A stretch of DNA of 64,000 nt, taken from positions 25,730,001 to 25,794,000 of the forward strand of contig OZ004609.1 in NCBI GenBank assembly GCA_963924565.1, given 5' to 3'. Source of the DNA: Ascidiella aspersa. Lineage: Eukaryota. Below, piece by piece: positions 11,501 through 63,240 of this stretch. Position 1 is the stretch's first letter, and every line of letters starts with the position of its first letter. The notes beneath the pieces were generated by a model, which saw only the letters and a program-made list of their open reading frames with translations, made no database searches and had not been told where the DNA came from. A program made the position numbers and the translations under genes.

Positions 11501-14500
11501 GGTTGTGAGCTTCTTCTGCAAATTTTGCAGCCTAACTATACCAAAGTTGTGCGAACACAAAACAAATAAACTGTAGCGTTTTATCTCTTTATAACCACAT
11601 AAACATCGCAAAACAACGACTCACCGCGCACAAGGTTTTGATTACGTTGATTTTGCACATGGGGCATGTTTGTCTGCTCTCCAGCCACGGGTCAATGCAC
11701 TTCTTGTGGTAGACGTGTCTGCAAAAACAAGAAAACACCGTTAAAAATGCCAATCGTATGACGAGCTATGACCAAATCGTATGAAGAGCTATGAAGGTAA
11801 CGGTAACTGGAAATTAGCAACGTATAGCTACACATTTTATACAAAATATAGAAGACATTCAAAGACATTTGCAAAGAAAATTGACAGCATTTCAAACACA
11901 TAAATTTGGATTGTGCGACGTTTTTTTAATACAGTACAGATGCAATGCTTAAAACAGTAACAAATAAATAAAAAAATTGGTTTTACAACGACACTTCTAT
12001 AAATAACGTAAGCTAGATATAAAAATTATCAGAGACTTTTGGAAAAATATAGGGTTATTTAATACTTTTCAATACACACAAAAAAACTGAATTAGGTATG
12101 TCGTCCATAACTAGCATTTCAAAGAGACAAACAAAATACCTGTGACGTGCTATTCAATATTTTTTATTTGTATTTATTTAAAAAAATGCTGTGCTGCCTA
12201 CTTAATTTATCTAACTTTACAAATTTATGGTTTATTTTATGCGCGGTTACGTGTGGTAAGTTGTGTAAAGAGAAGCTACAACAAACATATGACGCCCTGT
12301 TGTAAAACCGTTCCGATCCCTGGAAATTTTCACGAGCATTTTTATTGGTCTATGAAGGTTTATAGCTCAATAAAGTGCATTTGATTCGGGAGAAAAAATT
12401 CCGCGTAAATTCTGTTTATGCTCACAACATCCCAGAATGGCCCATACTCCTTCTGCAAATCTTTTTTTCTAACTGAAAAAAAAAAACAATTTCTCGCAGT
12501 ACTTAACATACAGCAAGACTGTTTTAAACCGCAAAACGAAACCAGGTATTGACTATAACTATATGCATCAAGCGAAAGGGTCAGCCCCTTTCAAACCTAA
12601 AACGAAAGACTAAAGGGGCAAACCAATGTGTGAGTCAGCATTACTCACCCGCAAGGCAGCTTTCGGACCGCCTCACCAACCCGGTAGCACTCGATGCAGA
12701 CCGCGCAGGTTTCCTCGTTGACTAGGACTTCGTCTCCTGACCGGACGGTGCGGGTGTCCAGCTTGGCGATCACCTTTCGCGTGAGGCTTTGGCGCTGTCT
12801 CTGCAAAAGGATTTTGGGCATTTACAACGCTGTTTGCTGTACGCGACCAGTCGAATATGTCGAGCGATAATTGTCGTTTTGATTTGCGTGTTGGTCGAAT
12901 TGCGGGGCCCATCTGTGCCGCTAAAATAGAAACCTCACGAACACGGAGAAAAACGGAAAAGGTGGGTAAGGGAAGTCGGAAAATAGCACGAAAACAGGGT
13001 GGTACTAGTGAGCTCGCCTCCTTTTGAATAGTGAAATAACGAACGTCATTACGGCAACCATATTTATGTTGGAACATAAGCACCTTTGAAGTGTTTTCGT
13101 TTTAGTAATGATTGGACACGTAAGATTCGAAAAACAATATCCTGGATTAAAAAAAGCAGGTATTAACAACATTTTCGTAAAGGCTCAAACCAAGTGCTTA
13201 TTAAAACTTTTCCGAAAATGTGGTTAAAACTTTTCCGAAATGTGGATTGGGGTTGTTTTAGCTCGGTTGTGGTCGTTTTTAACAAAATCACAAATGCATC
13301 TGGTTGGAGAACAAAGTAATGTACCAAAATATGTCATATGGGCCAGTCGAGTCAGTGTTCAATTTTATTTAGTTCGATTTCACTTGTGTGGGACTGGCAG
13401 TCATTTTGATTTCCCAACATCAGCGCCTCGCTTCGGCAAACTATTTAACACATTTGGCAGCTTATACGCAGATGATTGACAGCTATTCAGGTTGCGACTT
13501 CCGAGAAGTTGGTATGTAACTATGACGTGAAATGTAGGCTTGAGCGCTATTTCTGATAATCCGATATAAAAATAGAACAATTTGATGTTCAAGATAAATG
13601 TCCCTTCAGGCGGTTGAAAATCTAAACCAAAATAACAAACAGGCACACGACATTTTCTAGGCAAATAATTACGATTTTTTGTGGGGAAAATCCTTTTTTG
13701 GAATAGACTCTAATATAAAGTTAACTTTAACCAAGTACTTCGCGCTAGGATTTTCAACCAAACACTTTTTGGTATATAAACCAAAAACAGCTCTTCTGTT
13801 AGATCTACTTGTTTTGTAAATCAACTAGAATAAATTTCGTTTGTCACTGATATTTTAAATCGTGTTAAAGACTAACACGTGCACTCAGTGCCTGTTGTGG
13901 GAGGATTTTTAAGTTATTATCTACCACAGCACACAAAAACGTACTGTAAGGCACCTCAGGCCAATACACGCCTTCGCAAACACATTTTAATGTTAATTCC
14001 TACAAGCAAACGATAACAGTAATCCAGCTGACGTCTAACGATTACTAAAGCGGTGGCCGTTCACAACATTTCATTAGCTGATTGTTTCAGGAAGAAATGA
14101 TTTATTTTATGCATAAGTTCAAAAGGGCACATTTTCGTGAAGTCATTCAACCGATCCCGTGGCCAAACTAAACGGGGATATGACGCAAATCAATAACGCC
14201 TCAATTGATACAGCTCCACAGACCTCACGCAAGCAAGTGCCAATTATTTTGGACGATGTCTAGCTAGTCCCGTAATTTTTAAGGGCCTTATAGAACTATA
14301 CAGCACGGACCATATTTGCTACTCTATATCCGGACATAAATAACTTCAGAAATTCACGTTTCAAGCGTTAAAGTCAATCAGTTGTGACCAATAAGTCCTT
14401 TTATTAGTTCAAGGAATCAATATTGTTTGAAGGAATCAATATTGTGGTTTTATGGCAGAATGACTCATCAAACGTTCAACAAGAGGTCTTCTTAAGTTAA

Positions 14501-17163
14501 TTTACAATTTACAAAGTATTACCATTTAGGGTATTCGTCAACTTGTGTAGTACTAAAAATATAACATGGCCCTTTCATTTCAATGCGGAAATAGTAAAAA
14601 GTATACAAGAAGCACGTTTTAAATGTACGCCACTGCATTTAGGGAAAGTATCTACCTTACAGTACACAACAGGCGAATGTTTCACGATTAAAGCCACTGA
14701 CAGATTTCCACAAAATCTACTTTCCATGTAAGTTTGTGATCATTGGCAATTTCAAGCAACAATGACTTGACAAAAAGTTTGAATGGCAGACGAGCAAGCA
14801 GTGTTTCAATATTTATGGGAACACCAAACGAGGGTGTCAACTGTCAATCATTGGACACTTTTTGTGACTTTACACTGAACACCTATGTTTTGTACAAGTA
14901 ACCATACATCAGTGGCATTTTACACAAGGCATCAGGTGTGTGGCACTTCTAAATAGAATTACGTGGGGACAAAATGGAAGCTGTCATGTTATAAAGTTTA
15001 CCAAACTTACTTCTAGGCCTAAATGCAAATTGCTTTTTGACAAGTGGACCACCTTTCTCCCAAGGGTCATCATATTTTATGTATGCCATCATAATTTGTG
15101 TGTGTGTTTATTTATACAAAGGATTTATAATATATTAATTTTTGCCAAATGCATTACAAAGTGCACTTTAAATATAACCCGTTCATTTAAAGACTGTATA
15201 ATACTGAGCAGATCATAATTTCATGAAAACATACACACACATTAAAAATTTTTCTGTCATTAAACAAGTTATTGCCTTTTTAAAGTTTGGTTTAAAATGG
15301 CGACCAAACTTTCATGTATAAACTCGTTATATAATTCGGTGTTACTTGCTGATCTTATACCCTTACCTGGCCCCTGTTGTGTGCCTGAATAATTCGGAAT
15401 CTCTGAATGTAGTAGAAAACAAGCCAAGCAAGAGACACCAGCATCAAAATCATGAAGGAGACGGCAACAAATATTATTGTTGTCTTTTGTGGCTTGCCTC
15501 TGATGGAAAAAACAAGCTATTAGACAGATTATTTAAAATTTAGCCTTGGGAGAAAAAAAGATGGAACTTGCAATGTAGAGCTGGAAACATGTAATGTAGT
15601 GCATCTTTTAACATCAACCTCAAAATTTTTAATGTAATTCAAAGAAGTGCTTTAGGTCAGTTTATCGTTGTACCACAGTAGTACGATATTATGAAATATA
15701 TATGTGAGAAGTTGTTTAAGTTGAAAATAATCCGTTATTTTGGCAGTTACCAACCAGGAGCTTTACCATTGTAAAATGTAATAAACATACTTTTAGTTGT
15801 ACATAAATACCCTACATAGCAACATGTACTTCTAAAAACAAATATCAATTTTTATATATTTTAAGACATAGCTGCTGATTGCTAATATCGCAACTGTTTT
15901 CCCATTGTAATACAAATCAAATTTTTTGACATTTTAAATAAATAATTATGCATAATATTAATATGCATTTTGATGGCTTGTTATGTGTGATTTGTCCACC
16001 AGCGCTATTCAACATAAGTGAGCTTACCCTGGCTGTGGGTGTCTCTTTCCAGGATTTATATCAACAGTTACAATAACTCCATCGTTAACTTGAGCAGCAA
16101 TGGAAGAAGCAAGGCTGTGGTGTATTATGATCGACACAATATCTTGGGAACCTTAAAAGCAATAGAGGTGTCAGACAGTACAGGATTGGAGAATGTAATA
16201 TTTCAATGCTGTAGTTATACAACTTTTCTTACCTTCTGTAGCCATTTTTAAAAACAGTGTACTCCATTTATTTATTTATACAAATATATAAATAAAACCT
16301 TACTTTCATGGCTCATTATTGTATTTTCTTGTGAGTCCTTGTAATCATAAACAATAATTCCACTTGCATTTCCCCGTATTGCCTAAAAGTAAGGTAATTG
16401 AGTTTTTAAATAACAGGAATTCTCAAATTCCAAGTGGTATACCAATCAAGCAAATAACATTGCTAACTCACATTGTCAATCTTATCAGCAAATGAACAGT
16501 TTCCTCTTGAAACTAATGCTATCCATGGAAATGTCTTGGTAACGCGGTGGTAATCAAAATGACATCCATCAGTAATTCCTGTCTTGGTTATGAGCGAATG
16601 TACCACTTGCCCATGTGCATTTAGAATTGGTGAGTGAGCACCGTAACTACCAACCTCATCTGTGCCTGTTTCCGAACCCTTGGACAAAACAAGAAGATAA
16701 ACTAGTTGTTTGGCATGTACAATAGAAAAGGCACTTCTGTACAACTTAAATGCACAGGATTCAAAATCAGAATGTTGGTGTTCACATTTACACTAAATCA
16801 TTACAGTATTAAAAATTGGGCACTGGTCTAGAATCCTACCACATTATTAAATCAACGCGCACAATATTTGGTTTAGGGTTAGTATAATCATTATTTATTA
16901 ATAATACTTGACCCACCCTAACCCAAGCGCTAACCCCGCACCCTAACCCAAATAATGTGCGATGTGGTAGGATTCTAGACCGGCGCCAAAAATTGTGAAA
17001 GCCAACTTACAACTGAAAAATTCTGTTCATTCATAGTGTAGTTGAACACCACTACAGCACCATAATAGTAATCATTTGAGCTGTCTGTGGTTAGTCCAGC
17101 AGAAACAAATGAATCCAACAGGAAACTTGTTGTAACACAAAACAGCACTTTGTAGAGCATCAT
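5578..17163 (-). CDS. PA-TM-RING E3 ubiquitin ligase, Goliath/RNF130/RNF149/RNF150 family, about 381 aa
   Basis: Nine phase-consistent exons: 17163-17011, 16678-16472, 16382-16304, 16151-16028, 15499-15367, 12800-12649, 11718-11625, 8974-8897, 5703-5578. Signal peptide; PA domain ([16 protein letters not shown]); TM segment [26 protein letters not shown]; RING-H2 CAVCIE...[16 protein letters not shown]...CPMC. The last two (low-complexity) exons are less certain. Confidence 0.92.
6828..7099. mobile_element. hAT-type MITE (272 bp)
   Basis: TIR CAGGGGTTCTTAAACT / AGTTTAAGAACCCCTG; perfect 8-bp TSD ATTTAGAC at 6820-6827 and 7100-7107. Confidence 0.9.
7618..7855. mobile_element. hAT-type MITE (238 bp)
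   Basis: TIR CAGGGGTTCCCAACCT / AGGTTGGGAACCCCTG; TSD TTTTACAG/CTTTACAG (7 of 8). Confidence 0.88.
16819..16987. mobile_element. Merlin-like foldback MITE, family A
   Basis: About 26-bp TIR GGC(A/G)C(T/C)GGTCTAGAATCCTACCACAT; perfect 8-bp TSD AAAAATTG; internal GGGTTAG/CTAACCC arms. Confidence 0.85.
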
Positions 17164-17239
17164 TAGCTACTTTGTCTCTGTAATGAATAAAAACCCAAAT
17201 ATAACAATGAAAAGTTAAGATTAACTTAGGATAAAAATG

Positions 17240-17511
17240 GGCGCTCTTTCACTAGTGTACGTGAAAAGTTATGCAAAAAAAAATAATAATAATACTGCAT
17301 ACCACAACGCATATTGTTTGGGTTAGGGTGCGGGTGAGCGTTTGGGTGAGGGTGGGTCAAGTAATATTATGTTTATTATTAATACTAACTTGACCCACCC
17401 TCAACCAAACGCTAACCCGCACCCTAACCCAAACAATATGTGTTGTGGTATGCGGCATTTGAAGAAAAATTTTTTTTTAATAATTTTTACGTACAATAGT
17501 GAAAGAGCGCC
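17240..17511. mobile_element. Merlin-like foldback MITE, family B (almost entirely palindromic)
   Basis: TIR GGCGCTCTTTCACTA...TAGTGAAAGAGCGCC; perfect 8-bp TSD TAAAAATG; long internal inverted arms shared with family A. Confidence 0.88.
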
Positions 17512-19148
17512 TAAAAATGTTGCAAAATTATGGGGCATTATAAGAAGTTGTATGAAAATACCAATTACCAACCTTAATTCAACATAATGTATAAAATATA
17601 AAAAGCAAACTTTAAAACAAATTGATATTTAATTTTTGTTTAACACGGTATGTTTGTGCATCACAATTTATTTATTTATTTAGCAATAGATTAGCTTGCT
17701 TTTACAGTTATATATATATAACAAAAATATTATTATAACATGAAAGATTTTAAATGTTATAAATATGAATATAACAATATCGCATATATTTCAATGACTT
17801 TTGGGGGGCTTAAGGTAAGATAAAATGACATATTTTATCACTGTTGTTCTCTTTTTCTGATCTAAGCTTTTAGGGGTATATAAAATATAAAAATATTTAC
17901 TCAAGAAACAAAAACAGTTAGACTCAGCGGCCTACTTTTTATTCATTGTTTACGTAAAATCGGCTGTGATAACGCACAGAACCACTACTGAAAGCTGTCT
18001 ACTCATTTTTTCTCTGGATGTTGTGACGCTGCTTTGTTGCGATGTAAGTTGGTAAAGGGAAATGTTACTGCGTCACCTTGTGGTCATGAATAAATTAGTA
18101 AGTTAGTCCTTTGTAAATGGTTTTACGTTAGAATTAGATCAGTGAATAAAAAAAACTCAAAGAGGAATAATATTGGGCTTAACTGTTTGGTAAAACTCAT
18201 AGACCTAACAAAGACCTTTTTGTGGTGTTCACATGATTTTGTAATACGCTACTTTTGTTACCGAGCAGCCATAAACTTTTTTAATTTACTTATGAACAGC
18301 GACTAGCGGTATCTATTTTTTGCTGGTCATTATAGAAATCAGTAGTTAAAATAGTTAACAAGTCAAAAGTTTTGTTTCTTTGTACCTTTTTAGACGTAAT
18401 TCTGAATATTACATTAAATAGGCATGGTGGTAAACGAAAGAATACGAAATAAAATGTCTAAAACCACATAGATAGGGAACCGGTACATTGAGACCGGCCA
18501 TTTGTTCTAAAAAACTTTTTTAGTACGAATTACGTTAAGTATTAATTTAGGTGTGTCCCTGTCCATGTTTAAGTCCACAAAAAACGCAGTCCTCTGGCTG
18601 GTTTTCACATTTGATAAAAAAGACGGTTAGGAGACGGTAAGTCAAACAAAGTTTTATCGCACAAGCGACGTTTCATCTTGCTAAGCTTTTCCTGGTGATC
18701 ATGTTTCCGAGAAAGTTAGGACTTCCACACACAGCGTATTGATAAATATTTTTTTATTTCTAGCGTAACAAGCACACCATTGTTTTGTAATCAGCACAGC
18801 AGATAGCGCGTGAACTTTATAAATCTAGAGTTCGGGAACATGGACACGATAAACAATTCTTAAAACGAACGACGGAAGCGCCTTGGAGTGAGTGGAACAA
18901 AAATGATCATCACGAAAAACAAAGACACACAACGATTTACGTGTTGCTTTCCAGAATAAAATACGGCGTATATTTACATGCGACACTGCAAATAGTGTGT
19001 TATGTTTTTGTGTAGGTTGAAGGCACTTTTCCACACCAAAACCTATTTTAACTGAACTGAAAGTAAGTCATGATGTTTTTTGTTACCTTCGCCAGTCACC
19101 AATATATTCGCGCGAAAACTGATGCACGAATTTCGAACCAAAGCGAGA

Positions 19149-22100
19149 TTAGGTCGGGCGGGTCAGAAAGCCGTTCTTTTCGGGCTGGTAAAAGTCGTGG
19201 CACATAGCCTGCACCAGTTCGTTCAGTTCCTTCATCAGGTCTTCCCTGCAACTGAAATGAAACATAATAAGAATATCAAAGCCTATACAGAAGTAGGTAT
19301 CATTTTGAACGTTTCGAATAACTCTTTATTCATTTTCAACATCGCCTTATTACACCTCCATCCAATATGTCTGAAATGAAACAGTTTTGCAATTTATGCA
19401 ACAAATTTGCACTTAATAAAGGTAGACTAATGATAGCAATTTCTTTATATTGCACAGAGTTTTTAACTTGAAAAACTACCAAGAAAATTGAAACGAGAAG
19501 TATGACCTTAAGCACGTCGACCGAATTTTAGCTCAGGCTTTGTTTGTTATGTTTGACGCAGAAAGTTTATGTATAAATTTCTCAGTGTAAAATTGGTGCT
19601 TTGTTTTATTGCTGCAATTGTACTCTGGTTAAGTTTATTCGCAACCAAAAACCTCACCAAAACCAAATTCTCTCTTAGGAATTCGCAAAGGAAAAATCCT
19701 TATGACATATTATTTTAATTTCGTCAAAGTTTTTTATGCAAATCTACACAGAGTGTCCCATTTGCGTAGAATTGACTTACATTCCGACTTTTCCGCATAT
19801 TTCCGAGTAGTACTTAATCTTCGGCTCGGTGCCGCTGGTTCGAATCGTTAGCACCACTTGGTTGGAGAAATAGAAGGTGATCATATGACTTGATGCTGAA
19901 GACGGGAGAACCTAAAAGTAGCAGTTTTGAATGTTAATAAATGATAAGGGAATATGGTTACCGTTTGCTTCATTTAATTCTTGTGGTGAAAACGCTACAA
20001 ACCAAATAGAAAATATTGTAACTTAAAGGTTGTAAAAGGTTAGGATGAATAATATTACTCTTTAGGTTAAATGTAGATAGTGGGTGGAACATATCAACGG
20101 TGCGTCCCTCGCTGTACATTAGTCGTTTCATGTGTCATATAAGTTTTATTACGCCTTTCGGATTCGCAAGGTAAAGATAAAATAAAGTTTAAGTGTAATT
20201 GGATACCAAAAGTGAGTTGTGGCCGTGAAAGTGACGCATATTCAACCGTTTGAAGAAGGGCAGGAGTGTTACTTACCACAAACATCAGTTTGTTGTGTAC
20301 ACAAAAGCACTTTAGGCGTTCGTTAAAATGCTACGTGTATAACAGGTCAGGACGACGAAAACTGTCAAACATTAACTGAACGCGATGGAGAACTTTAAAG
20401 TGGAATATCTGACCAGCGCTTACCCATACAAAGATTTATGTTTTACGAAGACAGTGCTTTACATATATAAATTAGAGGTAAGGTACCAATGGAAACACTA
20501 TTAATTTGTTGTTAAAATACTCTATAATCTAAGATTTGCGAATTCTGTTCAACCGACTACACATTGCAAGATTATGTATGCATTTTTATTGACGAACATT
20601 TTCCCGTCTATCTATTATTTAATTTTCTCTTAATGACTGTTTCCGTGAATTTTTCTAAAAACGTTTTAACGATTTCGTATCACTAAAAAGTTTAAAAGGG
20701 TTGAATATACAGATAACAGTTTTTCGTTTGTACTATACGAAGTATCTATTTCGCCTAAAAGGCACTAACGGTTTCTGTAAAAAACTGTGAGGACGATCGT
20801 ATAAATAATTAAAATGAGCTACATGATCCTAAGGTCTAGACCAGGGTCTTTCACAGTAGTCTTCGGGGGTCACGACTGAACATGTATAATTTGAATTTTT
20901 CGCCAATAGAACTCAAGTTTTGTGTTTTTTAGGACTTTAGAGACCTCTCATGTAACGTTCCACGGCGTTTTTTTCTAATCCGTTGGTGGGGTGTGGTGGG
21001 CAAAAGCGCCAATGGATGAAAGAGGGTCCCTACACATAAAAGCCAGTACACAAATTGCCACGCACCGCCACTTTGTTTGCCTCGCGGCTGTCAAAACCGG
21101 TTGTCAGGTCTCGAACGTGGCTGATCGTGAAGCGGGCTAGCTTGCCCGGGTACCGGTGCCCTCTTGACTCGTCAACGATGTCGTCACCTGCGCTGGCGTC
21201 ATAGTGACGTAGTCGGTGGAACATGGCGTCGATTTTGTCGCGATCGTGTCCGATGTAGTAGGAGTTGCTGCTTACGTGATCGCCGTACCTAATTATCGCG
21301 TGATAGCGGCAAAGTGAAAGCTGTGTTTTTAGCCAGAGAACTTATGCCAATAGATGAAATATTTAAGATGTTTTAATTAATTTATTTAAATTTCCTCATA
21401 AGACAAGAAAATGGCGAAGCCATTGTTAACGGTGATATAAATGCGTAATCAAATTAGGCACGGAATAACTGTTGTTCGCCAAAGGTCGGTAACATCTGGA
21501 GAAAAGTTAATAGTACCCCTCGATGTATAAAGCATCAAATTATTTTTTTTAAAAGGCGACAAGGATTCCGTATCAGTTTAGTCTGAAAATCATCTTGCCT
21601 TTATCCGAAGTTTACATTTACTTAGTGATCTTGTATTTAAGACTATAAGTAAAAGGAACGCATATTTGATGTGTAAGGTCAATTATAAATCACATGATAG
21701 GTCGTTAAAAAAATAAAAAAGCCAGGTTACTTTTCGTAAATATTTTGAAGTTGCTGCGCTAGCGTGGTGCCTTTGGTTGCTAGGTAACAAGCGCACTCCG
21801 CCATAACCGACAAGCCACTGATTCCATCTTTATCGAGGACGTTGCTTCCGTACATGAACCCTGCAAAGCAAAACAGAAACGAAATACAGTTAATCTAAGT
21901 TTCTTTATTGTTTAAAACAGCGCTTCGTAACCTATGGCTGTTTACGCCCTAAGGCAGCGGCTCACGAAGTATGCGTCACGACCTAACTTGGGTTGTAAAG
22001 GGTAATCAAACGGGACGGTGAAATATGCCAATCGTTGACTGAATGATTCCTTTAATCAATGCTCGTTCTATGCCAACATAAACTAAATTATTGCATCTAA

Positions 22101-32084: not shown

Positions 32085-32192
32085 TCTTGCAAATAATTTG
32101 GATATCTAACTTACACAAGCAAAATTTAAACAACGCAAAACAGTCTATTCCTTGCCAACTGATTCAACTGCGAACTGGAAATGAACAAAATG

Positions 32193-50019: not shown

Positions 50020-50201
50020 AGATCCGCACCTGACTTAAGGTATTTGCTGCCGCGAAGATGAAAGTGCGCTGAAAGTAAAACCTTAGACGTAGAAGAAGTG
50101 GCCTGATGGCTCGAGCACTTCACCTGACTTCCGGTTCCTGTTCTGCGGATTCGCACTATTAAACGCAAACTGTAATTGCTAACTTCAAGCGGCCCGGCTC
50201 G
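50020..50201 (+). promoter_or_regulatory. Putative RagC/D promoter and non-coding first exon
   Basis: CpG-containing stretch with ACTTCCGG (ETS-type) and two CACCTGAC boxes, ending at donor-like TCG|GTACAT, after which CpG density drops. Confidence 0.45.
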
Positions 50202-50856: not shown

Positions 50857-51246
50857 GGCGCTGGTCTAGAATCCTACCACAGTTCTAAAATCAACGCATA
50901 AAATTTGAGTTAGGGTGCGGGTTATTATATTCTTTGTTTAATAATACTACTTGACCCACCTTAACCAAAACGCTAACCCGCACCCTAACCCAAATGATGT
51001 TTCGTTGTGGTAGGATTCAAAATAATACCGCATACCACAACGCCTATTGTTTGAGTTAGAGTGCGGGTTAGCTTTCGGGTGAGGGTGGGTCAAGTAATAT
51101 TATGTTTATTATTAATAATACCGCTTCACCCACCCTCACCCAAACGCTAACCCGCATTCTAAGCCAAATAATTTGCGTTGTGGTAAGCGGTATTTGAAGA
51201 AAAATTTTTTTTTATTAATTTTCACGTACATAAGTGAAAGAGCGCC
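50857..51246. mobile_element. Fused family A + family B Merlin-like MITEs
   Basis: Left end GGCGCTGGTCTAGAATCCTACCAC (family A, ends ...GTGGTAGGATTC near 51018) joined to a left-truncated family B copy ending GTGAAAGAGCGCC; flanks do not form a TSD. Confidence 0.8.
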
Positions 51247-51531
51247 AACGTTTTATATTGTATTGGAGATTAGCAATCCTTTTTGGACAAAATTAGCCTC
51301 TTGTTTTATAAATGATATTAAAGAAATATAGCGTAATCTTGTAATCTAACATATTTACTTAAAACTTGCCATTTTCTTTGGTTCAAATATAAGTATTTAA
51401 GTAATTGTGTTATTTACTGGGTTTATTTGGCAGCTTCATTACAAGAAATCGGAGAGTAACTGACGAAATATTAAACAATTAACAAAATACAAAATCAAAT
51501 AAAAACCTTTATTAAATATTTTTATTCCAGC

Positions 51532-54500
51532 ATGGACCCACATGAAGGATTTAGTGTTGGATCATACAACAAACCATTCTACCAGGGTGTAGATGATGAC
51601 ACAATTGTTGCTGCAGCCTCTGGTGATGCAAAACCAAGAATTCTTATAATGGGACTGAGGAGAAGTGGAAAATCTTCTATTCAGAAAGTTAGTTGTGCTT
51701 TTTAATGTAACATAAATGTAGGTAAAGCATAAACGTTGTAGGTTTTCTTTCTTTTCTATTGAACTAACATAATTGGATTGCAATATAGTGAACATCAGGA
51801 CTGCATTCTATAACTTGTTGCCGCCAAAGATTCCTGCAAAAAATGTTTGCCACCATTTTTTGATATATACACCGGAAATGCTATTATTTGTTGCAACACA
51901 GGCTAAATATTGTCACCGGTATGGTTTAGGCAGCATTACATTCTAAACTCTTTGGCGGAAAGGCACTTGAATATTAACGGGGTGAATAAAAGTAGTTTTA
52001 CCATCTGGATCAGGATTTTCAGTTCTGCTGAACTTTCGTTAAAATCACATTTTAAATGGGTCCTGCAAGCTTGTTCTTTGGTTCAAAGTTCAACTGATAA
52101 TTTGAAATATGCCGAGTTGGCATTTTGTTGGTTTAAAGAAAGCATCTATCTTAATGCAGTTTCTCATATTTTCCTAATTGTTCTGATTTCTGTAACAGAA
52201 TTAAATAAATAAATAAAATATGTATTTTTCTCTACTTCTGTTTCAAGGTTGTTTTCCACAAGATGTCGCCAAATGAGACCCTCTTTCTAGAAAGCACTGC
52301 AAAAATTTGCAAAGACGACGTTTCAAACAATTCTTTCATAAACTTTCAAATCTGGGACATTCCAGGGCAAATTGATCTTTTTGAGCCGACATTTGACCTT
52401 GCCATGATATTCCATGGCACAGGGGCATTGGTTTTTGTTGTAGATGCTCAGGTGATTTATAGGGGAAAAATAGTCATGAATTATGCCAGAAAGCGAATCC
52501 TACTGTGTTTTAAAAGTAATTCACGAGTGTTTTGTGAAGCTAAACCAATGTAAAACAACAGGGTTATTATACTTAGATGTTGAAATTTATATACTAGATT
52601 TCAATTTCTCAATGTTTGCCAAAAATATTGATCACTAGTTCTAAAACTGTTTTCTTGTGTTTTTTTTCATCAAAATTATATTCTTAACAAGGCATCTATA
52701 CATAAATATGCCACAAACATAATTTATAGTATTAGAGAATTTTTTTATTTTTCCTCAAACATATTCTTTTAATTTGCTTAATAATTTTCCTTTGTTCAGG
52801 ATGATTACATGGATGCCTTAACTTGCTTGCACCGAATTGTAGCAAAAGCATACACAGTGAGTATTATCCTCTAATTTTGATCTTTTAAACTTTAACAATA
52901 AAATTCCTGATCAGTGGATGCAGCAAGGTGTAATTCTTTGCACTAAAAGGGAGTAATGCATTTTGCTTGTCATCCCACTTGACAGATGTCATAGATTGTT
53001 AATGTCATGGCACATAGAATTTATTAACAGACATTGAAATAATATGAAAAGTCATGTAATTGATTGAATTTTGTTAAGGTTAACCCGAATATTCGGTTTG
53101 AAATTTTCATCCACAAAGTTGATGGTCTGTCAGACGATCATAAAATCGAGACTCAAAGAGACATTTCGCAAAGAGCAAATGAGGAACTACATGAAGCCGG
53201 ACTCAATGATTTACATCTGAGGTTTACAATAAAATATAAACAATCTTTTCTCATTCTGTTTTTTTGCCCACCCAAACATGAAACATAAAGAGAAATATAT
53301 AAAGTGGTTGAAACTAGAAATAAATCGGCCCATGTTACTTTATCATTTAACAATTAATTTAAATATTGATTATCCCGATTTTGTAAACTTGATTGCTTTG
53401 TAATTGTGTGAAGTGGTTATTCACATTTAAAACTTGCCATACTTTTACAGCTTTTACCTGACTTCCATTTACGATCATTCCATATTCGAGGCATTCAGCA
53501 AAGTAGTACAAAAACTGATCCCTCAACTATCCACCTTAGAAAACCTCCTCAGTATTTTCGTACAAGTGAGTGTTGTCGCCCTAAATGACTTTTTTAAGAA
53601 ATTTAATTTTCTACAACCTATTGCTTTTTGGTTTTATAAGAGTCCGTTGCTAAAGTGGTCAGTTCGGTCATTTTTATTGCAACTTGTATCTTGCAAACGT
53701 ATAATTAAAGTAGTTAGGTTAGCAACGTGCATACTGGGATACGGTTCATTTACAATCTATAGAAATAACAGATTTTGATATCTGAGATTATCTGCGTTAG
53801 TTTTAACCTGTATTTTACCTGAAACAGCAAACTAATACTATTATTTAAAAAATAGTTGTGCTCTTATTACGCAACGATCACTCCCGAAGAACCAATACAA
53901 TGTTTAAAGAAGCCAATAATAGCGTTGACAATAGAGATTAAATTACGATATTGGCAATGGTAGTAAAAAAACAATACCTAGGCTAGCAGCAAATTCGACA
54001 CCTAATTGCATGGAACCTTGAACTTCGAATCCCGCTGTTCATCGCACTTCAACGCAATTTTGTCACCTCGGTAGAACTCGGGCGTCGAGAAGACGTTTCT
54101 CTTCGATGTTACGAGCAAGATCTACGTGGCAACCGACGGCTCTCCGGTCGACATGCAATCCTACGAACTATGCTGCGAAATGATTGACGTCATGATCGAC
54201 ATGACCTGCATTTACGGGTACGACCGAGAGAAGATTCGTGCCTCGAGAGTGTAGCATTCGAAACGATCGAATAAACTTGCGGTTCACCACCGTATCTTAA
54301 AAATAATAATACTTTGTACATGAAACAACGATTTGTTTTGAGGTCAATATTTTCGTTGAAGTGGATGCTAATTATGAAAAAAAAAATTTTTATCAAAACC
54401 TTATAAATTGTAAATTATTTTTTAAACATAGAATTCTGTTGAATTAAAAACCGATTTCGGTTTCGAGCATTGTTTTAGGTCGATTGCAAAAATGTGATGT

Positions 54501-55377
54501 TTGACATTATAGCGGCCCCAAGACAAGACTTTGCGTGATACTCGATATGTAACCGAGTCAAATATCTGAAAATATTTCCCAACCAAATCACGATTAAATC
54601 AATGCATTTGCATTATCACATGAACTTTTCTCCTGTTACAGTGACGAGTCGGAATGCGCGTGTAAACAGGATTCCACTTGCATTATCAAGCTGAACAACT
54701 CGAGTATTTTGTACTTGAGGGAAATAACTCGCTTTCTCGTGCTCGTCTGCATTCTGCGGGACGAGTCGTTCACAAAGCGAGGTTAGTAATTTCATTTGAA
54801 GTCAATCTGCTTTAGGGTATTCCACGCCACCACTCCCTTAACTGAAGCTTTTATCAAGATGAAAGTTCTCTTAGTAACAGATTGTTTTTGTTGAATCGCA
54901 TTAGTTTGAATGAAGATTTACCTGCCGAAAAACAGTTTTTCAGCAGATATTTTATGAAAAACTTTGCAGTCCCGTATTTTATTAAATGTTAGGTTTGGAA
55001 CAGACAGATGTTCGTTGAAATTATTTTTAACGTTGTTTACTTACAGTTTTAATATGGATTTTCTATTGGATTTGGCTTACTTTCTAAATTGTAGTACAAC
55101 AGTATGTTAGCTTATAGCTTGCAACAAGTATACACAACGTCAATACAAAAATATCATATAAAGTTTGTGGAGGGCACTTCTTGTGCGAATTCCACTGTAA
55201 GGAATGCGTAATTAACACTTTTTTTTTGGTCCAGGCATCATCAACTACAACATACTATGCCTGCAGAACGCCATTCACAGCGTGTTCGACGTGCGCAAGC
55301 CCAGCAAGCTAAACGGCAAACTGCCGCTGGAAGGCCTGAATAACGTTCAGCAGATGTCGAACTCGGCAAACGCCTAA
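51532..55377 (+). CDS. RRAGC/D: Ras-related GTP-binding protein C/D (RagC/RagD, Gtr2 orthologue), about 366 aa
   Basis: Exons 51532-51687, 52248-52451, 52800-52856, 53079-53221, 53451-53565, 54075-54217, 54642-54781, 55235-55377. P-loop [67 protein letters not shown], and C-terminal roadblock domain. Confidence 0.97.
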
Positions 55378-57039
55378 ACAAACGACCTCTCTATCATCAT
55401 AAGCGTTACATGCTAGTCACTGACCGGCGCTAACGGCGGCGCATTGCACTTAACGTACAGCCATCGCGCCGCTATGAAAGCTTGTAAAAATCGGTGGAAA
55501 GGTGTCGAGATGCGCCTGTAAGTCATTTTACTCCAGAGTGACACGGTGCCCTTTGGGTACGAGATTTTCATCACAACTTACTGATTATATAACCTGCGTC
55601 CAAATCCATTTGTTCACAGTTTGGAACGCCCTAATTTTTTCACAGAAAAAGTGAAATTATAGCGTCGAAATAAGATCCACGCTCGCAGTATTTAGCAATT
55701 CGTCGCGCGCATTCGTACTGATTATTACTCACGCACATCATTAAACGTTACTTGCGCGGCCAACGAGCCTGCTGTTTTGGCATTTTCGTTATATATTTTA
55801 AAACGTGTTGTATGCTTGCTGTCGTTAGGAACACGTGTTTAACAAAGGCTGGAAGGGCTACCATGGTCAGCTGTTGATCCTTCCAGGTGACGGCCATTTC
55901 TTAAATTCCCTATTTTAACTGTTTACTGCATACTTGCGCAAAAACTAAAACGCTGTCCTTTTTTGAACAGCTTTTTAAGCAGATCGCAAGACATGTGCTT
56001 TCTTATATCGTTGTAAGTGTGACACTGTAACTTATTGAAAGAAATTGGGCGAAAACACAAATTAGGTGTTCACAATTTCTTTGTTTTCGATGCGCCAGGT
56101 AGTACTTCGAGTTCATATTTAAATCAATAAATTTTCCTACTGATACAGGACTCTATAATCTTGGCCGCAATATATTATGGGTTTTGTAGAAAATGATATT
56201 GAATAATAGATTCAATTTCACAACAAACAAATCCGCCAGAATTAGAAACCTTGTTTGTTACTTAGTTTTTAATTGCCCTTTTAAATTAAAAAAAGGTATA
56301 AATTGTGATGCAATAACGTTCGGTCTTGCCCACAAGGCTGCTATTAGGGATTATGAATAGGAACCGATGCTCATTTTCCCAATGGTGCCGGATCCTGAAA
56401 TCTTGTTTACAACATGTTAACTTACCAAAATGACATTATGGTTAACAACATGTTTTAGGGAGCAAATAATTTTGAAGGCTACGACAGCAAAAGTCCTTAT
56501 GAACTGAAAACCTTCAAAATTTGTGTATTTATTTTAAACTTAACAAAATACAAACAGGTCCACATTTATCATTAGCTTCTTGTTGTTTTTGTGCTTCTCC
56601 AATGTTTTTCACTTTATTCAGATTTATTGCAGACCCTCGTTAAATGTGGACTCTGCAATTGCGCAAAAACGCAAATTTTATTGCTCCTATGCCTCGTACT
56701 GCTGTACAATGCATGTTAGAGGAAACACTGGGGTTGGCTAAATTGACCCCTTGCAACATCCGTTATCGATTCTCAAAATAATACCGGTTAGAAGCCGGGG
56801 TATATGCATAATAGGGCTGTCGCTTTTTTCACTCGTCTACTACTGCATTGTTGACGAAATTCAGAATTTGGGGATATCATGTTTAAATTTTTTTTCACAT
56901 AAAAGTTTAAGTTGGCAAAAAATATAGTTCTACAGGCTCCCAGTACCACGTTTGGCACGTGGGCCTTTCCAAAGCTGAACCAATTTAAAAATTCCATGCC
57001 ACATCAACTTTTAAAATTAAGTGCAATGAATAGGCCTAC

Positions 57040-58222: not shown

Positions 58223-61200
58223 TCAGAGCTTGGGAGATTTGAGTGGACTCTGGAAGAGCATCTCGCCGGTTCGTTTGTAGGAGAACTTCTGCTTGCGGCG
58301 GCCTTCCTGTGAAGGGGACGGAAGCGGCGCGTTAGGCGACGTGGCGTTGTTTTGCTGCAAAAAAGTGATATCATTAACAAGCATAAAGCTATAGACAAGA
58401 ATCCGGACCACGTAGCAATTTATTACAGCCCGCGGCTTATTTTTTAAAAAACTTTTTTAATAAAAATTCCCCTTTTTTCGCAATTTTGAAATATTTTATT
58501 GAATAAATTAGACATGCGAGACATCCTCACTTATTCCTTACTCTTAAAAGCTTGTCAAAACTAAAATATTTGTAGCTATCTTTAGTTCTTTACAAAGGAA
58601 TAATACTTCATGGTAGGTGTATTTTTAAGTCCCTTAGACGTGATCCGGCCCGCCAAGACATTTTTGTCTTTCGTGCGGCCCCTTGTCAAAAATAATTGCT
58701 CACCCCTGCTATAGACGATACTCTTGTTGATTTGCAATCAGTTGTAGTACATAGGCTTGTAAGAGAAACCATTTCGTGGCCCGTCGTAAAATACTTACGA
58801 AGAGCAACATAGCCTTCCAGTAAAAATATTACATCCTAGCACTTTTATATTTCAAGGGTATTAACAACGTTTTTGGACTGTTTTTGGGCTTTGCTGTTAT
58901 TTTTGTTTACTAAGACGATAATGTTAAGTTCCTCTTGAAAAACCTCTTCGGGCGCTTTTTTCCAAAGAGACAGTACATGGCACTAACAAACTAGAAAAGC
59001 CGCAACACAATTACATTATACTGTTAAACAGCAAATTAGCTTTGCATTACCATATATAGTACATGTTATAAAACGTGCACTACCTTCATGTGAGTGCTTC
59101 TTTTTAAAATATTCACTCTTGAATAGATGTTTTTATGATCTTCCTCCGTCTTGCTGCTGCTGGGCTGGTTTTCGATGTTGGATAAATTTACCCTAAAATA
59201 AATGAGTATAGTGGTCGTATAAGCTTAAGGAAGTAAATGACGCTAGTTTCGGTAATTACACTAGGTAAAATGACAAAACAATTTGCTTTAGATTTATACA
59301 CTTAAATATTACCTCTTCTCGTCATCTTGAAAGGAGCTTCCAACCATGTGTAGTGGGGAAATGCTACAAAAATCACAGCAATAAATTCTATTTTATTAAA
59401 ATTGTACCCAGGGTACTACATATAAAAAAACTACCCAGGGTACTTCATATCTCAAGGCTTGTACGAACCATTTGACTGGTTGAAAGTCGCTCAGGGGTGA
59501 TTTGGCACAAGGTGGATCTAAGGGTCTCAGGGCGGAAAATCTGGAACCACTTAGAAGAAACGTGCGACTTGGGGCAGAACTTGGCCTCACAAAACTGTCC
59601 CGTTCTTCTGCACTCAGTTGCGACATTGTTATTCGGGCACCACCAGCATTGATTGTGGTTTTCATTCCTGAAAAAAAATGATTTTGTTAAGAACTGATCT
59701 TTTGATTGTGGGTTTATCTTAGTTTTTTTATACTTTGAAAGGCAATCTTGGCTTTGAGTCACTGACACAATCTTTAAAGAAATTAACACATTTTAACTAA
59801 CCAAACTTTAATAAGAATTATAAGTTTACACTTTACTAGTGACTGGAAAAGTAAACAAAATTCTTTGCAACACACTTCATACTTTATCAAAATTATTCGC
59901 TACTAATAGTAAACATCCCAGGTTTTACAGTTATTATATAAATACAAAAGAGATACTTCCTACCAGTAGATGGACTTGCGTCCACATTGGGTATATTTTG
60001 TGAAAAAGGGCTGTTGTTCATCATGTTTAGAGTGGTTTCAGATAACATGCTAAACTGACTGGATTCATCCACAATGTCTTGTTGTATTTCCGAACCGGCA
60101 TTCTGCATGGTGAGATCAAGACCAAATTCATCTGCAACAGATTTACTCAGATGAGTCAAGCGTCAAAATCTCAAAAGAGACACTTCCACTAAAACCTTTA
60201 ACTGTGATATACACACAACTCTTAATAAAAAATCTAAATTTTTGCTTTAGCATTGGGCCTGTATTTAACTTTCAACATGGGTATTTATTTTATTTTAACT
60301 TACTTTCAAACTCAAATGAGCTCATTGTATTATCTTCCTTGGAAATGTTTTCATCAAACTGAAGCCTCCTGCTAAAGGAACTCTTTGATTCCACTTCATT
60401 TTTTAAGGGAGAGGGAACAGGTACGGTGAAACCATCAACTGTGTAATCATAACTTTCAAAATGATCTCCCGATGCCATCAAAGAGTCACTGTCCACATTT
60501 AATGTTGTTATGGATTGTCTACTGTCATCAGTATCTTGTGTGATGGAACTGGGGGTGTTTATGGTTAGTTGATTAAATTTACTTGAAGGTGTTGTGTTAG
60601 GCAAAGAGGTCTGAAAGGCTTGTTTAATTAGGTCAGTGCCAGTTTCACTTGTACTTAATATGGACTTGAGGATAGGATTTTCATTGCATAGTGTAGTTGG
60701 TATAGTTGATTTTTCTACATTGGTAGCGAGTTCATATTTTCCTTTTAAGGCAGTGAGTTCATTTTCAAGTTCCTCTGTATATCGATCATTCTTCTGTAAT
60801 GCTTTCTGGAGCTGAGTGACTTGTTTTTCGGCTGCCTCAAGACGTGACTGTAAGGTAGCAACAGTCAGTCGCCCAAATCTAAAGAGTATAATATGTTATC
60901 TGTTTGTCTATATAAATCTTAAAAACAAAAAAGTCAATTAAAAAAATACTTCATTGGTGATCTTGTTGAGATTTCTTCTTTTATTCGCCGATTTTCTATA
61001 GTTAAATCATGATTTTCCTTTGCTATAACAGTATTAATCTAAAATAAAATCAGATGTTAAATTTTTAAGCAGAACCACTGTTCATTTTAAAGTTATGTAA
61101 TATCAAGAAAGGTTGTTAAATAGTTTTTATTTACTCCTCTAAAATATATAAATTACCTTTTTAACATCAGAAAGCTCTTTTTTCGTCTTTCCGAATGTCT

Positions 61201-62969
61201 TTGTAGCATCTTGCAACTTTTTGGTGAGATTTAGCATCAGATCGACATCTTTTTTGCTGCTACACTGACTACACTTTTCACACTGATTTATCACATCAGG
61301 TGAAGTTGAGGTGGTAGGTGTGACAGCAATTTGAACTTTCAATGCATTTATTTCTCTTTTATGCATTTCAACAGAATTCTCCAAACCAAAGATGACATCC
61401 TAAAAAAACAAATCTAGTGTTACAATAGATTAAAAATCTTAAGAAAAATACTGAAATGCAAAGAAAAAAAAACGATTTTTGAACAACACAAAAGGAAACA
61501 GACGATTGTTCAGTTGTAAAATACTACATTACACTGAACATCAAAAACATATAATTTATTACCTCATACTCCTTTCGTATCAAATCGTATCTTGTTCTTC
61601 TTAACTCCCTTGCAATTGTGCTACTGACAGCAGTTTCAGCTGTGTTGGGTAGATTTCCACCTAGCAGAAATGCAACATGATTAAAAGTTAATAAATTAAT
61701 TATTTTGTATGTTACTTGGTCATAGCGGCTGATTCAAAGGGAGGGGGGAGCACATGGCCATGGCCGCCAAACTGTGTTTTTTCTATGTTAACTACGCAAA
61801 TTAGTTTTCATGCTTCGAGCGAATCTAAATTATATTTATAGAATATCTTAGCCCATTTTAATTAAATTGTTTTTGCCCAAAGGCGCCATGTGTCTCATTG
61901 CACCTTCAAAAAAGAAAGATTTGGTAATTTAAACAATAGGTGTTCATTCGCTTTGCCAAAGCCGATAGCATACTTATGTTGCTTTTCTATTGAAATTTAA
62001 CGTAGCATCAGAATTGAAAGTTACACCTATCCAATCTAAAACTAATAAATCAAGTAAACTTTGTTGTGTTCTTCAGGTTACTTTTTATAACATTATGTTT
62101 AGACATTACTTTGTGGCGTCACATTTTAACAGAACTTTGTAACTTCACATTGTGATGTCATCTCTGAAAAAAAATCTTTTCCCCTCCCACCAAACGAAAA
62201 TCCTAGATCTGTGGCTACTTGGTCGTACCAATGATTGCTCTCAAGGGGCTCTGTGATGTTATTTCTACACGGCAAGTTGGGCATTGGTTGTTCCTGTCAA
62301 GCCAAGCATTCATGCACACACTGCAGAAGACATGGTGGTTGCTGCAGGTGACAGGCTCCTTTACCTACAACATGAACAAAGTATTAGCAACAAACAAATA
62401 TTTACTTCTGGTGTTTATGCTGTGCAATGAAACGTTGAAAAAAAAAAAAAAAGTTTGAGGGGGAGGCCAAGAATTCCTGATAGGCTTTGCAAAAGGCAGA
62501 AATTAAGTTAATGTAGTGAGCTATTTTGCTGAACCAAAACACTAGATTGCCTGGGGATTTATTTATAAAACGATAATGTAAGTCGAATAAGTTGTAAAAT
62601 GCGAAAATTATGACATGGATAACGCTGAAAAAACAACGTGGGGGTTCATGTTTCCCGCGTAAAGCAATTTTTTTGCTGACGGCAACGTTTTAAGGGCTTC
62701 ACTGTAACATGCAAGCAAAACGAGATTTAACGAATTGCAACTTAAACACGATATAAACACTATACACGGAAAATTAGGAATCATTATACGCGTGTTATGA
62801 GTAAACAAAAAAATATTTTTTTACGTAAAAAAATATTTTGTGTCATAAATGACTCGAAACATTTTTTTTAAACAAAATTTTAATAAAAAATTACCTTGCC
62901 AAGGCAAATTTGACAAGAAATAGGCAAAGTAAAGGACACAGAAGAACGCAGCTCCTTCCCGCCAGACAT
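58223..62969 (-). CDS. OBI1: ORC ubiquitin ligase 1 (OBI1/RNF219): RING, coiled coil and Ser-rich tail, about 624 aa
   Basis: Eleven phase-consistent exons: 62969-62895, 62364-62229, 61660-61563, 61399-61157, 61038-60950, 60878-60304, 60131-59964, 59667-59469, 59363-59313, 59192-59084, 58354-58223. N-terminal TLPISCQICLGKVKEPVTCSNHHVFCSVCM..WL....QCPTCR and RSPMKFGRLTVATLQS are diagnostic. The 3' exons are less certain. Confidence 0.9.
61721..62215. mobile_element. Degenerate TIR-type element filling most of OBI1 intron 2
   Basis: G-rich left end (CATAGCGGCTGATTCAAAGGGAGGGGGG), C-rich right end, flanked by direct repeat TACTTGGT at 61713-61720 and 62216-62223; TIR pairing is poor. Confidence 0.4.
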
Positions 62970-63240
62970 CTCAAAACTAGCGTACTATGATCTGTTACGT
63001 CACAATGAAGTGAAACGCTTCATCGCGCATCGCACGAGACTATTGTTTACTTTTTATCCTTTCTAAACTTTTTATTGGAAAAATTCTAAATTTTACGTTA
63101 AACGTGCATCACTAAAAATGGTATTTATTTTAGAGCATAAACCCCGATTAATCGTAACGATATCTTCCTGTGAGTTTGTTTACATTCGATGTAGTATGAC
63201 GTCATAAATGCTTGGCATTGCAACGTGGATCAGCTGTAGT
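62970..63240. promoter_or_regulatory. Putative bidirectional promoter (OBI1 and divergent gene)
   Basis: Short CpG-rich interval between the OBI1 ATG and an oppositely oriented donor; full CRE TGACGTCA near 63198 and TTACGTCA near 62995. Confidence 0.5.

What the first reader, a model, noticed from the sequence alone, without database searches (positions are those of the whole stretch)
11600..63000. Four housekeeping genes switch from CpG-poor/low GC3 to CpG-rich/high GC3 about 3.5 kb after their promoters: a length-limited 5' gene-body methylation footprint?
Seen in sequence (hand counts of codons ending G/C): RNF exon 16382-16304 has 6/26 vs RING exon 12800-12649 38/50; PGM2 exon 2 9/33 vs last exon 24/31; RagC/D exon 1 13/52 (no CpG in 156 bp) vs last exon 37/46; OBI1 last exon 31/43 while its middle exons are AT3-rich (about 7 CpG in 60241-60900). 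By eye the transition lies near 14500 (RNF), 23700 (PGM2), 53600-54000 (Rag) and 59600 (OBI1), each about 3.4-3.9 kb from the inferred TSS, on either strand. The very short introns also concentrate in the 5' zone. Established: Ciona has mosaic methylation of housekeeping gene bodies, and germline 5mC deamination depletes CpG; 5'-biased methylation is typical of some insects. Inference: here methylation stops at a near-fixed distance from the TSS, implying a promoter-anchored ruler rather than whole-gene-body methylation. The developmental gene sFRP lacks the depleted zone.
Basis: partly seen in the sequence, partly recalled or inferred. Interest (0 to 1): 0.8.

Follow-up and report, generated by a model that had tools for sequence, protein, structure and literature searches.

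The report
CpG-poor gene starts, CpG-rich ends
In this sea squirt, many everyday genes have lost CpG letters only in roughly their first 3-4 kb, as if egg- and sperm-line DNA methylation starts at the gene's beginning and then stops; this gives a testable handle on how gene methylation is aimed.

Summary
The window holds five sharp CpG-depleted blocks (CpG o/e about 0.5, TpG and CpA both raised) of 2.3-4.2 kb. They lie over the 5' parts of the RNF13-like, PGM2 and RagC/D genes, over all of OBI1, and over the ATP6V0C region.

RNA reads put the Rag TSS near 50.6 kb. One spliced transcript crosses the switch, which lies 2.95-3.4 kb from that TSS.

In 281 kb fetched from other chromosomes:
- All 9 long housekeeping genes tested are more CpG-depleted at 0.5-2.5 kb than beyond 4.5 kb (p=0.004).
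- A switch is found 2.5-5.1 kb from the first coding exon in 7 of them.
- None of 10 HECT-ligase 3' ends lies in a depleted domain.

Surely non-coding DNA keeps the same GC (0.28 vs 0.30) while its CpG o/e goes from 0.36 to 1.04. This points to methylation rather than base composition.

The "ruler" is approximate: two long genes stay depleted for 7 kb or more. The GC3 jump is exon-specific, persists outside CpG contexts, and is unexplained. No methylation data could be examined.

Three first-reader notes on other windows of this genome report the same pattern.

Verdict: a probable new variant of gene-body methylation in a chordate.

The parts
14375..17925 (-). CpG-depleted block (3.55 kb) over the 5' part of the RNF13-like PA-TM-RING gene. 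Signal-peptide, PA and TM exons have GC3 0.28-0.53.
   Evidence: HMM CpG o/e 0.49; Pfam PA domain; GC3 per exon.
11592..14374 (-). Undepleted 3' part of the same RNF gene. RING-H2 exons at 12648-12800 and 11628-11723 have GC3 0.75-0.76.
   Evidence: switch 2796 bp (support 2460-2965) from the ATG exon.
23284..26879 (-). CpG-depleted block (3.6 kb) over the 5' eight or so exons of PGM2 (GC3 0.18-0.42). GC3 already jumps between the exon cores 24027-24173 and 23571-23720.
19152..23283 (-). Undepleted 3' half of PGM2. Five further exon cores, from 22784-22879 down to the last exon 19152-19247, have GC3 0.53-0.78.
   Evidence: ORFs; GC3; CpG o/e 1.17 beyond 4.5 kb.
30388..34554 (.). Weaker CpG-depleted block (4.2 kb, o/e 0.74) holding the V-ATPase proteolipid (ATP6V0C-like) exons at 31079-31642. 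The rest of the block was not annotated.
50612..53565 (+). RagC/D exons 1-6, CpG-poor zone. Exons: 50612-50790 (5'UTR), 51529-51687 (ATG at 51532), 52248-52447, 52796-52856, 53079-53219, 53449-53565. GC3 0.25-0.46. Introns 2-5 have CpG o/e 0-0.54.
   Evidence: RNA joints and contigs; per-exon statistics; Pfam Gtr1_RagA.
53566..54074 (+). Rag intron 6 (509 bp), which contains the low-to-high CpG switch.
   Evidence: Joint 53565>54075 supported by 7 reads and an RNA contig; 200-bp profile.
54075..55800 (+). RagC/D exons 7-9, CpG-rich zone. Exons: 54075-54216, 54641-54779, 55233 onward (stop at 55375, 3'UTR beyond 55800). GC3 0.67-0.78, exon CpG o/e 1.5-1.75.
58955..62551 (-). CpG-depleted block (3.6 kb) covering all recognisable OBI1/RNF219-like coding exons (RING exon at 62227-62364). 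No switch within the coding sequence.
34555..51249 (.). 16.7-kb undepleted segment (CpG o/e 1.34). It holds the sFRP-like gene (exons near 38967-39251 and 41417-41770, minus strand) and a GC-rich stretch at 44-47.5 kb.

Best explanation
The CpG-poor blocks are the evolutionary footprint of germ-line CpG methylation.

In this ascidian, methylation of broadly expressed genes begins at or just after the transcription start. It usually covers about 3-4 kb (range about 2-5 kb) and then ends sharply, whether or not the gene continues. The 3' parts of long genes therefore stay unmethylated.

Deamination of 5mC on both strands has turned CpG into TpG/CpA inside the blocks. Outside them CpG stays at or above expectation.

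What is shown: the composition pattern, its polarity, its recurrence on other chromosomes, one transcript crossing the switch, and a DNMT1 gene.

What is inferred: that the cause is methylation, that it is anchored at the promoter, and what limits its length. My guess for the limit is a promoter-proximal chromatin state, such as an H3K4me1/H3K36me2-type zone read by the de novo enzyme, rather than H3K36me3, which would favour 3' ends.

The exon-specific GC3 rise in the unmethylated part needs a second, unidentified cause.
For: 1. Window blocks have CpG o/e 0.47-0.74 against 1.04-1.34 elsewhere, with TpG/CpA o/e 1.2-1.4.
2. TpG (1.22) and CpA (1.26) excess is symmetric in the 5' zones, against 1.08 and 1.01 in the 3' zones. 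Strand skews are small.
3. In surely non-coding bases GC is 0.282 vs 0.297, but CpG o/e is 0.36 vs 1.04. Rag introns 2-5 have o/e 0-0.54; introns 6-7 have 1.17-1.71.
4. Stranded RNA reads join Rag exon 6 (poor) to exon 7 (rich). No antisense reads were seen there.
5. Nine long genes (RNF, PGM2, six CCT paralogues, one adaptin) were compared. CpG o/e is 0.39-0.77 at 0.5-2.5 kb and 0.82-1.17 beyond 4.5 kb. All 9 rise; Wilcoxon p=0.004. Switches lie at 2.8, 3.7, 3.0, 2.5, 3.75, 5.1 and 4.3 kb.
6. In CCT exons GC3 and CpG density rise with distance (rho 0.52 and 0.56, p below 1e-4).
7. Across 10 of 10 HECT 3' ends CpG o/e is 0.86-1.23 over the HECT exon span (2.5-7 kb) and the 10-kb pieces are almost wholly in the undepleted state. 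41 of 43 HECT exon hits lie in undepleted DNA.
8. Nine depleted domains that each cover one recognisable gene average 3.53 kb, SD 0.55. This set was chosen after the fact.
9. DNMT1 RFD and catalytic domains lie at C2:20068776-20081753.
10. Weak hint: 3 of 51 CpGs in the Rag poor zone carry CpG>TpG variants, against 1 of 120 in the rich zone.
Against: - No 5mC measurement was available. CpG depletion reports past, not necessarily present, methylation.
- CCT_H stays depleted for at least 7.1 kb. Adaptin AP_h stays depleted for at least 8 kb, with a 1.3-kb island inside. CCT_F changes gradually.
- Complete depleted domains range from 1.6 to 9 kb.
- TSSs are known for one gene only.
- The genome sample is small (345 kb), aimed at housekeeping genes, and cut into 10-18.5-kb pieces that cannot hold long domains.
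- The 5' ends of the HECT genes were not seen, so it is assumed rather than shown that those genes are methylated at all.
- 1-kb windows are not clearly bimodal in CpG o/e.
- A DNMT3 catalytic domain was not found next to the ADD hits.
- GC3 differs also at non-CpG third positions, which methylation does not explain.
Confidence: 0.6

Rival explanations
1. This is ordinary Ciona-type mosaic methylation with no ruler. Methylated domains sit over transcription units and are merely eroded at both ends. Their 3' borders are set by local features, for example CpG-dense exons that recruit CXXC-type protectors and so keep themselves unmethylated. The similar lengths would reflect similar gene sizes and a small sample.
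For: - In Ciona sperm the methylated domain lies centrally over the gene, is depleted at the gene ends, and has borders unrelated to the ATG or the stop codon (PMC3827831).
- Lengths here vary from 1.6 to 9 kb, and two long genes are depleted throughout.
- The first exons after the switch are very CpG-dense, for example Rag exon 7 at o/e 1.75 and a CCT_D exon with 26 CpG in 210 bp.
Against: - The undepleted 3' part is not a short end effect. It is 4.1 kb of 7.8 kb in PGM2.
- The HECT-gene 3' pieces stay undepleted over most or all of 10 kb.
- The 5' depleted length does not track coding span among genes of 2-8 kb.
- Polarity is the same in 9 of 9 genes.
Confidence: 0.25
2. Methylation is not involved. 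Either a transcription-linked mutation gradient near gene starts lowers GC and CpG, or GC-biased gene conversion or selection near gene ends raises GC3 and CpG.
For: - GC3 differs even at third positions outside CpG contexts: 0.48 vs 0.61-0.68; Rag about 0.44 vs 0.70.
- Small positive T-over-A and G-over-C skews are seen in the 5' zones.
Against: - Non-coding GC is the same in both zones while CpG o/e differs threefold.
- TpG and CpA are raised equally. Single-strand deamination would raise one of them.
- Borders are sharp, within a few hundred bases.
- Gene conversion would also raise intron GC, which it does not.
Confidence: 0.1
3. This is a coincidence among four genes in one window.
For: OBI1 is not a true case of a switch inside a gene. 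The TSSs were partly guessed.
Against: The pattern was replicated on seven other loci on four chromosomes and at ten HECT 3' ends.
Confidence: 0.03

Closest known systems
Mosaic gene-body methylation of Ciona intestinalis (Suzuki et al. 2007; Suzuki et al. 2013, PMC3827831)
   Same: - An ascidian.
- Sharp methylated and unmethylated domains.
- Broadly expressed genes are the targets.
- Promoters and developmental genes are spared.
- CpG depletion serves as the footprint.
   Different: - In Ciona the domain is described as centred on the gene and depleted only at its ends.
- Here depletion is confined to the first 2-5 kb in most long genes tested, leaving many kb of 3' gene body untouched.
5'-biased gene-body methylation of holometabolous insects (Camponotus, Apis and others; Glastad et al. 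2015, PMC4419788)
   Same: Methylation is aimed at the 5' region immediately downstream of the TSS of active housekeeping genes, next to promoter-proximal active chromatin.
   Different: - The insect pattern is, from my own knowledge, mostly on exons and fades within about 1-2 kb.
- Here introns are depleted as much as exons, the block is 3-4 kb, and it ends sharply.
- The phylum is different, so the origin is probably independent.
H3K36me3-guided DNMT3B gene-body methylation of mammals (reviewed in PMC9246332)
   Same: Methylation of transcribed gene bodies.
   Different: H3K36me3 rises toward 3' ends, so that mechanism predicts the opposite polarity to the one seen here.

Membership tests
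Ciona-type mosaic gene-body methylation | Domains of CpG depletion with matching TpG/CpA excess | tested here: met
   CpG o/e 0.47-0.74 in the blocks. TpG o/e 1.22 and CpA o/e 1.26.
Ciona-type mosaic gene-body methylation | Sharp domain borders | tested here: met
   The 2-log-likelihood support intervals are about 0.1-0.9 kb for the clear cases. The Rag switch lies within one 509-bp intron.
Ciona-type mosaic gene-body methylation | Broadly expressed genes are targeted; developmental genes are spared | tested here: met
   Most RNF, PGM2, Rag, OBI1, ATP6V0C and CCT genes carry blocks. The sFRP region is undepleted. Breadth of expression was assumed from gene identity, not measured.
Ciona-type mosaic gene-body methylation | The domain spans the transcription unit, missing only the gene ends | tested here: not met
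   In 7 of 9 long genes the depletion stops 2.5-5.1 kb from the first coding exon. All 10 HECT 3' ends are undepleted.
Ciona-type mosaic gene-body methylation | 5-methylcytosine actually present in germ-line DNA of the domains | not testable with these tools
Insect-type 5'-biased gene-body methylation | The signal starts immediately downstream of the TSS | tested here: met
   Mean CpG o/e falls from 0.90 in the 500 bp before the first coding exon to 0.59 in the 500 bp after it. In Rag, depletion begins about 0.8 kb after the RNA-defined TSS, past the repeat-bearing first intron.
Insect-type 5'-biased gene-body methylation | The signal is concentrated on exons and fades within about 1-2 kb | tested here: not met
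   Introns are depleted too. Blocks are typically 3-4 kb with abrupt ends.
Animal CpG methylation toolkit | DNMT1 (RFD plus C5-methylase domain) | tested here: met
   C2:20068776-20069227 (RFD) and C2:20080392-20081753 (catalytic, 177 bits).
Animal CpG methylation toolkit | DNMT3 (ADD plus C5-methylase domain) | tested here: inconclusive
   ADD_DNMT3 hits lie at C5:16192312 and C1:7620720, with no methylase hit beside them. The second methylase locus, on C8, has no ADD hit.

The most novel reading that the evidence does not exclude
A chordate in which germ-line gene-body methylation is measured out from the promoter for about 3.5 kb and then switched off. Single genes are thus split into a methylated, AT3-rich, short-intron 5' part and an unmethylated 3' part. 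In the 3' part the exons, but not the introns, are kept GC3- and CpG-rich. These would be two different ways of marking exons within one transcript.
Probability: 0.3. Interest if true: 0.8.

Novelty: new variant of a known kind. Interest (0 to 1): 0.6.

Why it matters
How gene-body methylation is aimed at genes is a long-standing open question.

In Ciona, promoter identity did not decide it (PMC3827831). The mammalian H3K36me3 route predicts a 3' bias.

An ascidian whose genes are long enough to show methylation stopping a few kb after the start would point to a promoter-proximal cue. It would also allow a clean test in one species: 5mC maps, H3K36me2/me3, H3K4me1 and H2A.Z profiles, all against gene length.

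The pattern also shows that methylation state can split the codon usage of a single gene. This matters for codon-bias and substitution-rate studies in tunicates.

Tried and rejected
I stopped asking and did not seek those letters by another tool. The 5' ends of the HECT genes, two more adaptin genes and unbiased 200-kb tiles were therefore not examined.
- Direct methylation evidence: no run labelled as a methylation assay was listed. Reads were laid on RNA.

ANALYSES THAT DID NOT HELP
- The first HMM, without correction for local G content, confounded GC with CpG. It was replaced.
- Pfam and PDB searches on the short PGM2 3' exons found nothing. Those exons were assigned by order, frame and my recollection of PGM2 motifs, so they are leads only.
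- A shared border motif: TGACGTCA lies in the first CpG-rich Rag exon (54185) but not at the RNF or PGM2 borders. Rejected.
- Transcription-coupled single-strand deamination: rejected because TpG and CpA rise equally.
- Regional GC shift or gene conversion: rejected because non-coding GC is unchanged.

LITERATURE
- Suzuki 2007 and Nanty 2011 are not held in the library.
- Seven searches found no description of a 5'-limited domain in a tunicate.

LEFT OUT ON PURPOSE
Exons were searched one by one. Codons were walked across Rag exons only inside a script, to count GC3, and nothing joined was printed.
Full report
WHAT THE WINDOW IS

The window is G000:C3:25730001-25794000 of a 308.6-Mb sea-squirt assembly. 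Its TCP1-alpha protein is 90% identical to that of Clavelina, 88% to Ciona and 79% to Styela. The window contains no N.

On the minus strand it holds an RNF13-like PA-TM-RING gene (about 17.2 to 11.6 kb), PGM2 (26968 to 19152), an ATP6V0C-like gene (about 31-32 kb), an sFRP-like gene (about 39-42 kb) and an OBI1/RNF219-like gene (about 62.4 to 59.4 kb). On the plus strand it holds RagC/D (50.6 to beyond 55.8 kb).

CHECK OF THE OBSERVATION

Per-kb counts show CpG o/e of 0.34-0.6, with TpG/CpA o/e of 1.2-1.4, at about 15-18, 24-27, 52-53 and 59-62 kb. Most of the rest of the window reads 1.0-1.5.

A two-state model that corrects for local G content gave states with CpG ratios of 0.59 and 1.20. 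It places depleted blocks at 14375-17925 (3551 bp), 23284-26879 (3596 bp), 30388-34554 (4167 bp, weak), 51274-53550 (2277 bp) and 58955-62551 (3597 bp).

- RNF: 6/26 vs 38/50.
- PGM2: 9/34 vs 25/32.
- Rag: 13/52 vs 38/49.

For OBI1 I could not reproduce "31/43". Every OBI1 exon I can recognise has GC3 0.32-0.57 and lies inside the block. OBI1 shows the block but no switch within the coding sequence.

The sFRP region lies in one 16.7-kb undepleted segment.

RNA EVIDENCE

A stranded RNA run and RNA contigs of the same species define nine Rag exons. Exon 1 (50612-50790) is a 5'UTR exon. Intron 1 (738 bp) carries a high-copy hairpin repeat, which explains why CpG looks less depleted at 50.8-51.3 kb. 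The ATG is at 51532 and the stop at 55375.

Reads join exon 6 (53449-53565) to exon 7 (54075-54216), so one transcript runs from the CpG-poor zone into the CpG-rich zone. No antisense reads were seen beyond the repeat.

With the TSS near 50.6 kb, the switch in intron 6 lies 2.95-3.4 kb downstream. Exons 2-6 have GC3 0.25-0.46 and exons 7-9 have 0.67-0.78. Introns 2-5 have CpG o/e 0-0.54 and introns 6-7 have 1.17-1.71.

IS IT GENOME-WIDE?

Pfam searches of the whole genome give oriented exon hits. I fetched the chaperonin (CCT) genes, ten HECT-ligase 3' ends and one adaptin gene.

CCT genes. Those with coding spans over 5 kb repeat the pattern. One example is CCT_D:
- Its first five exon hits have GC3 0.20-0.49 and 1-5 CpG each.
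- The next three have GC3 0.71-0.89 and 9-29 CpG each.
- The switch is at 2536 bp, with support 2453-2555.
Over 51 CCT exon hits, GC3 and CpG density rise with distance from the gene start (rho 0.52 and 0.56; p=8e-5 and 2e-5).

Long genes together. For nine long genes (two in the window, seven elsewhere), CpG o/e is 0.39-0.77 at 0.5-2.5 kb and 0.82-1.17 beyond 4.5 kb. All nine rise (Wilcoxon p=0.004). Maximum-likelihood switches lie at 2.8, 3.7, 3.0, 2.5, 3.75, 5.1 and 4.3 kb from the first coding exon. CCT_H and the adaptin gene show no switch within 7-8 kb.

HECT 3' ends. All ten HECT 3' ends have CpG o/e 0.86-1.23 over the HECT exon span, and their 10-kb pieces lie almost wholly in the undepleted state apart from two short islands and some piece edges. 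41 of 43 HECT exon hits fall in undepleted DNA.

Short genes. CCT_A, CCT_I and RagA are depleted throughout and somewhat beyond their coding ends.

Domain lengths. Complete depleted domains in the 345-kb sample measure 1.6-9.05 kb, median 3.35 kb. The nine that each cover one recognisable gene average 3.53 kb (SD 0.55), but that set was chosen after the fact.

WHAT KIND OF PROCESS?

Three results point to 5mC deamination rather than a compositional trend:
- TpG and CpA are raised equally in the 5' zones (1.22 and 1.26, against 1.08 and 1.01). Strand skews are only 0.03-0.04, which argues against one-strand, transcription-linked deamination.
- In bases outside any open frame of 30 codons or more, GC is 0.282 vs 0.297 while CpG o/e is 0.36 vs 1.04.
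- The genome encodes DNMT1. DNMT3 is uncertain.

One further hint is too weak to count. Between individuals, 3 of 51 CpGs in the Rag poor zone carry a CpG>TpG variant, against 1 of 120 in the rich zone.

WHAT METHYLATION DOES NOT EXPLAIN

The GC3 jump remains at third positions that can never be part of a CpG:
- CCT exons: 0.48 vs 0.61, p=0.0035.
- HECT exons: 0.68.
- Rag: about 0.44 vs 0.70.

Non-coding GC does not move, so this is an exon-specific effect in unmethylated DNA. It could be selection for GC- or CpG-rich exons where methylation is absent, or some exon-limited bias. I could not decide between these.

Introns are also shorter in the depleted zones: approximate median 372 vs 618 bp, p=0.02.

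COMPARISON WITH WHAT IS KNOWN

In Ciona sperm the methylated domains have sharp borders and lie centrally over genes. They are depleted at the gene ends, and the borders are unrelated to the ATG or the stop codon. Promoters stay unmethylated from about -0.8 to +1 kb (PMC3827831).

In the ant Camponotus and other holometabolous insects, methylation is aimed at the 5' region just downstream of the TSS (PMC4419788).

The present pattern shares its domain character with Ciona and its polarity with insects. It differs from both in being a 3-4-kb block, covering introns as well as exons, that stops inside long genes.

In seven searches of the held library I found no description of this in a tunicate. 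Suzuki 2007 and Nanty 2011 were not available.

Other first readers of this scan noted similar switches in three other windows of this genome (s1-788857, s1-788902, s1-802429). One noted a long depleted YAP gene body (s1-802473). None of these was checked by me.

VERDICT

The compositional switch is real, polar and recurrent. Its best reading is a 5'-anchored, length-limited germ-line methylation domain. The "near-fixed ruler" is only an approximate tendency, with clear exceptions, and methylation itself is still to be shown.

LIMITS OF THIS WORK
- The sample of other loci is small and targeted.
- A TSS is known for one gene only.

Noticed in passing
window 16880-17511 and 50892-51194: Copies of one hairpin (MITE-like) repeat family sit in the 5' region of RNF and in the first intron of Rag. 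DNA-contig depth there reaches about 365,000 against about 100 nearby, so the family has thousands of copies. RNA reads hit it on both strands. It keeps its CpGs although it lies at the edge of depleted blocks.
   Followed up: partly
window 7008, 42041, 54185, 63197; all fetched loci: The palindrome TGACGTCA occurs 4 times in the window against 0.89 expected. Across 345 kb it is 10.9-fold over base-composition expectation in undepleted DNA and 4.2-fold in depleted DNA. This agrees with earlier notes on this genome.
   Followed up: partly
window 44000-47500: A GC-rich stretch (GC 0.53-0.57, CpG o/e 1.3-1.5) with long open frames in all six frames, upstream of Rag. It has no Rfam match and its nature was not determined.
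   Followed up: no
L022 4110-5783 (G000:C2:30784110-30785783, minus strand): TCP1-alpha (CCT1) is a single 557-codon open frame without introns, while the other CCT paralogues found as exon series have up to eight or more coding exons. Its depleted domain (2.2 kb) ends inside the coding sequence.
   Followed up: partly
window 29599-29671, minus strand: A tRNA gene (Rfam RF00005, 32 bits) lies between PGM2 and the ATP6V0C-like gene.
   Followed up: no
L029 3390-6101 and L031 1866-3689: Short CpG-depleted islands (2.7 and 1.8 kb) lie inside the otherwise undepleted HECT-domain regions of two ligase genes. They may mark internal or overlapping transcription starts.
   Followed up: no
L035 (G000:C1:397501-407500): An adaptin gene is depleted for 1.7 kb, then undepleted for 1.3 kb, then depleted again for at least 5.3 kb. 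This exception to the short-block rule could reflect an internal promoter.
   Followed up: no
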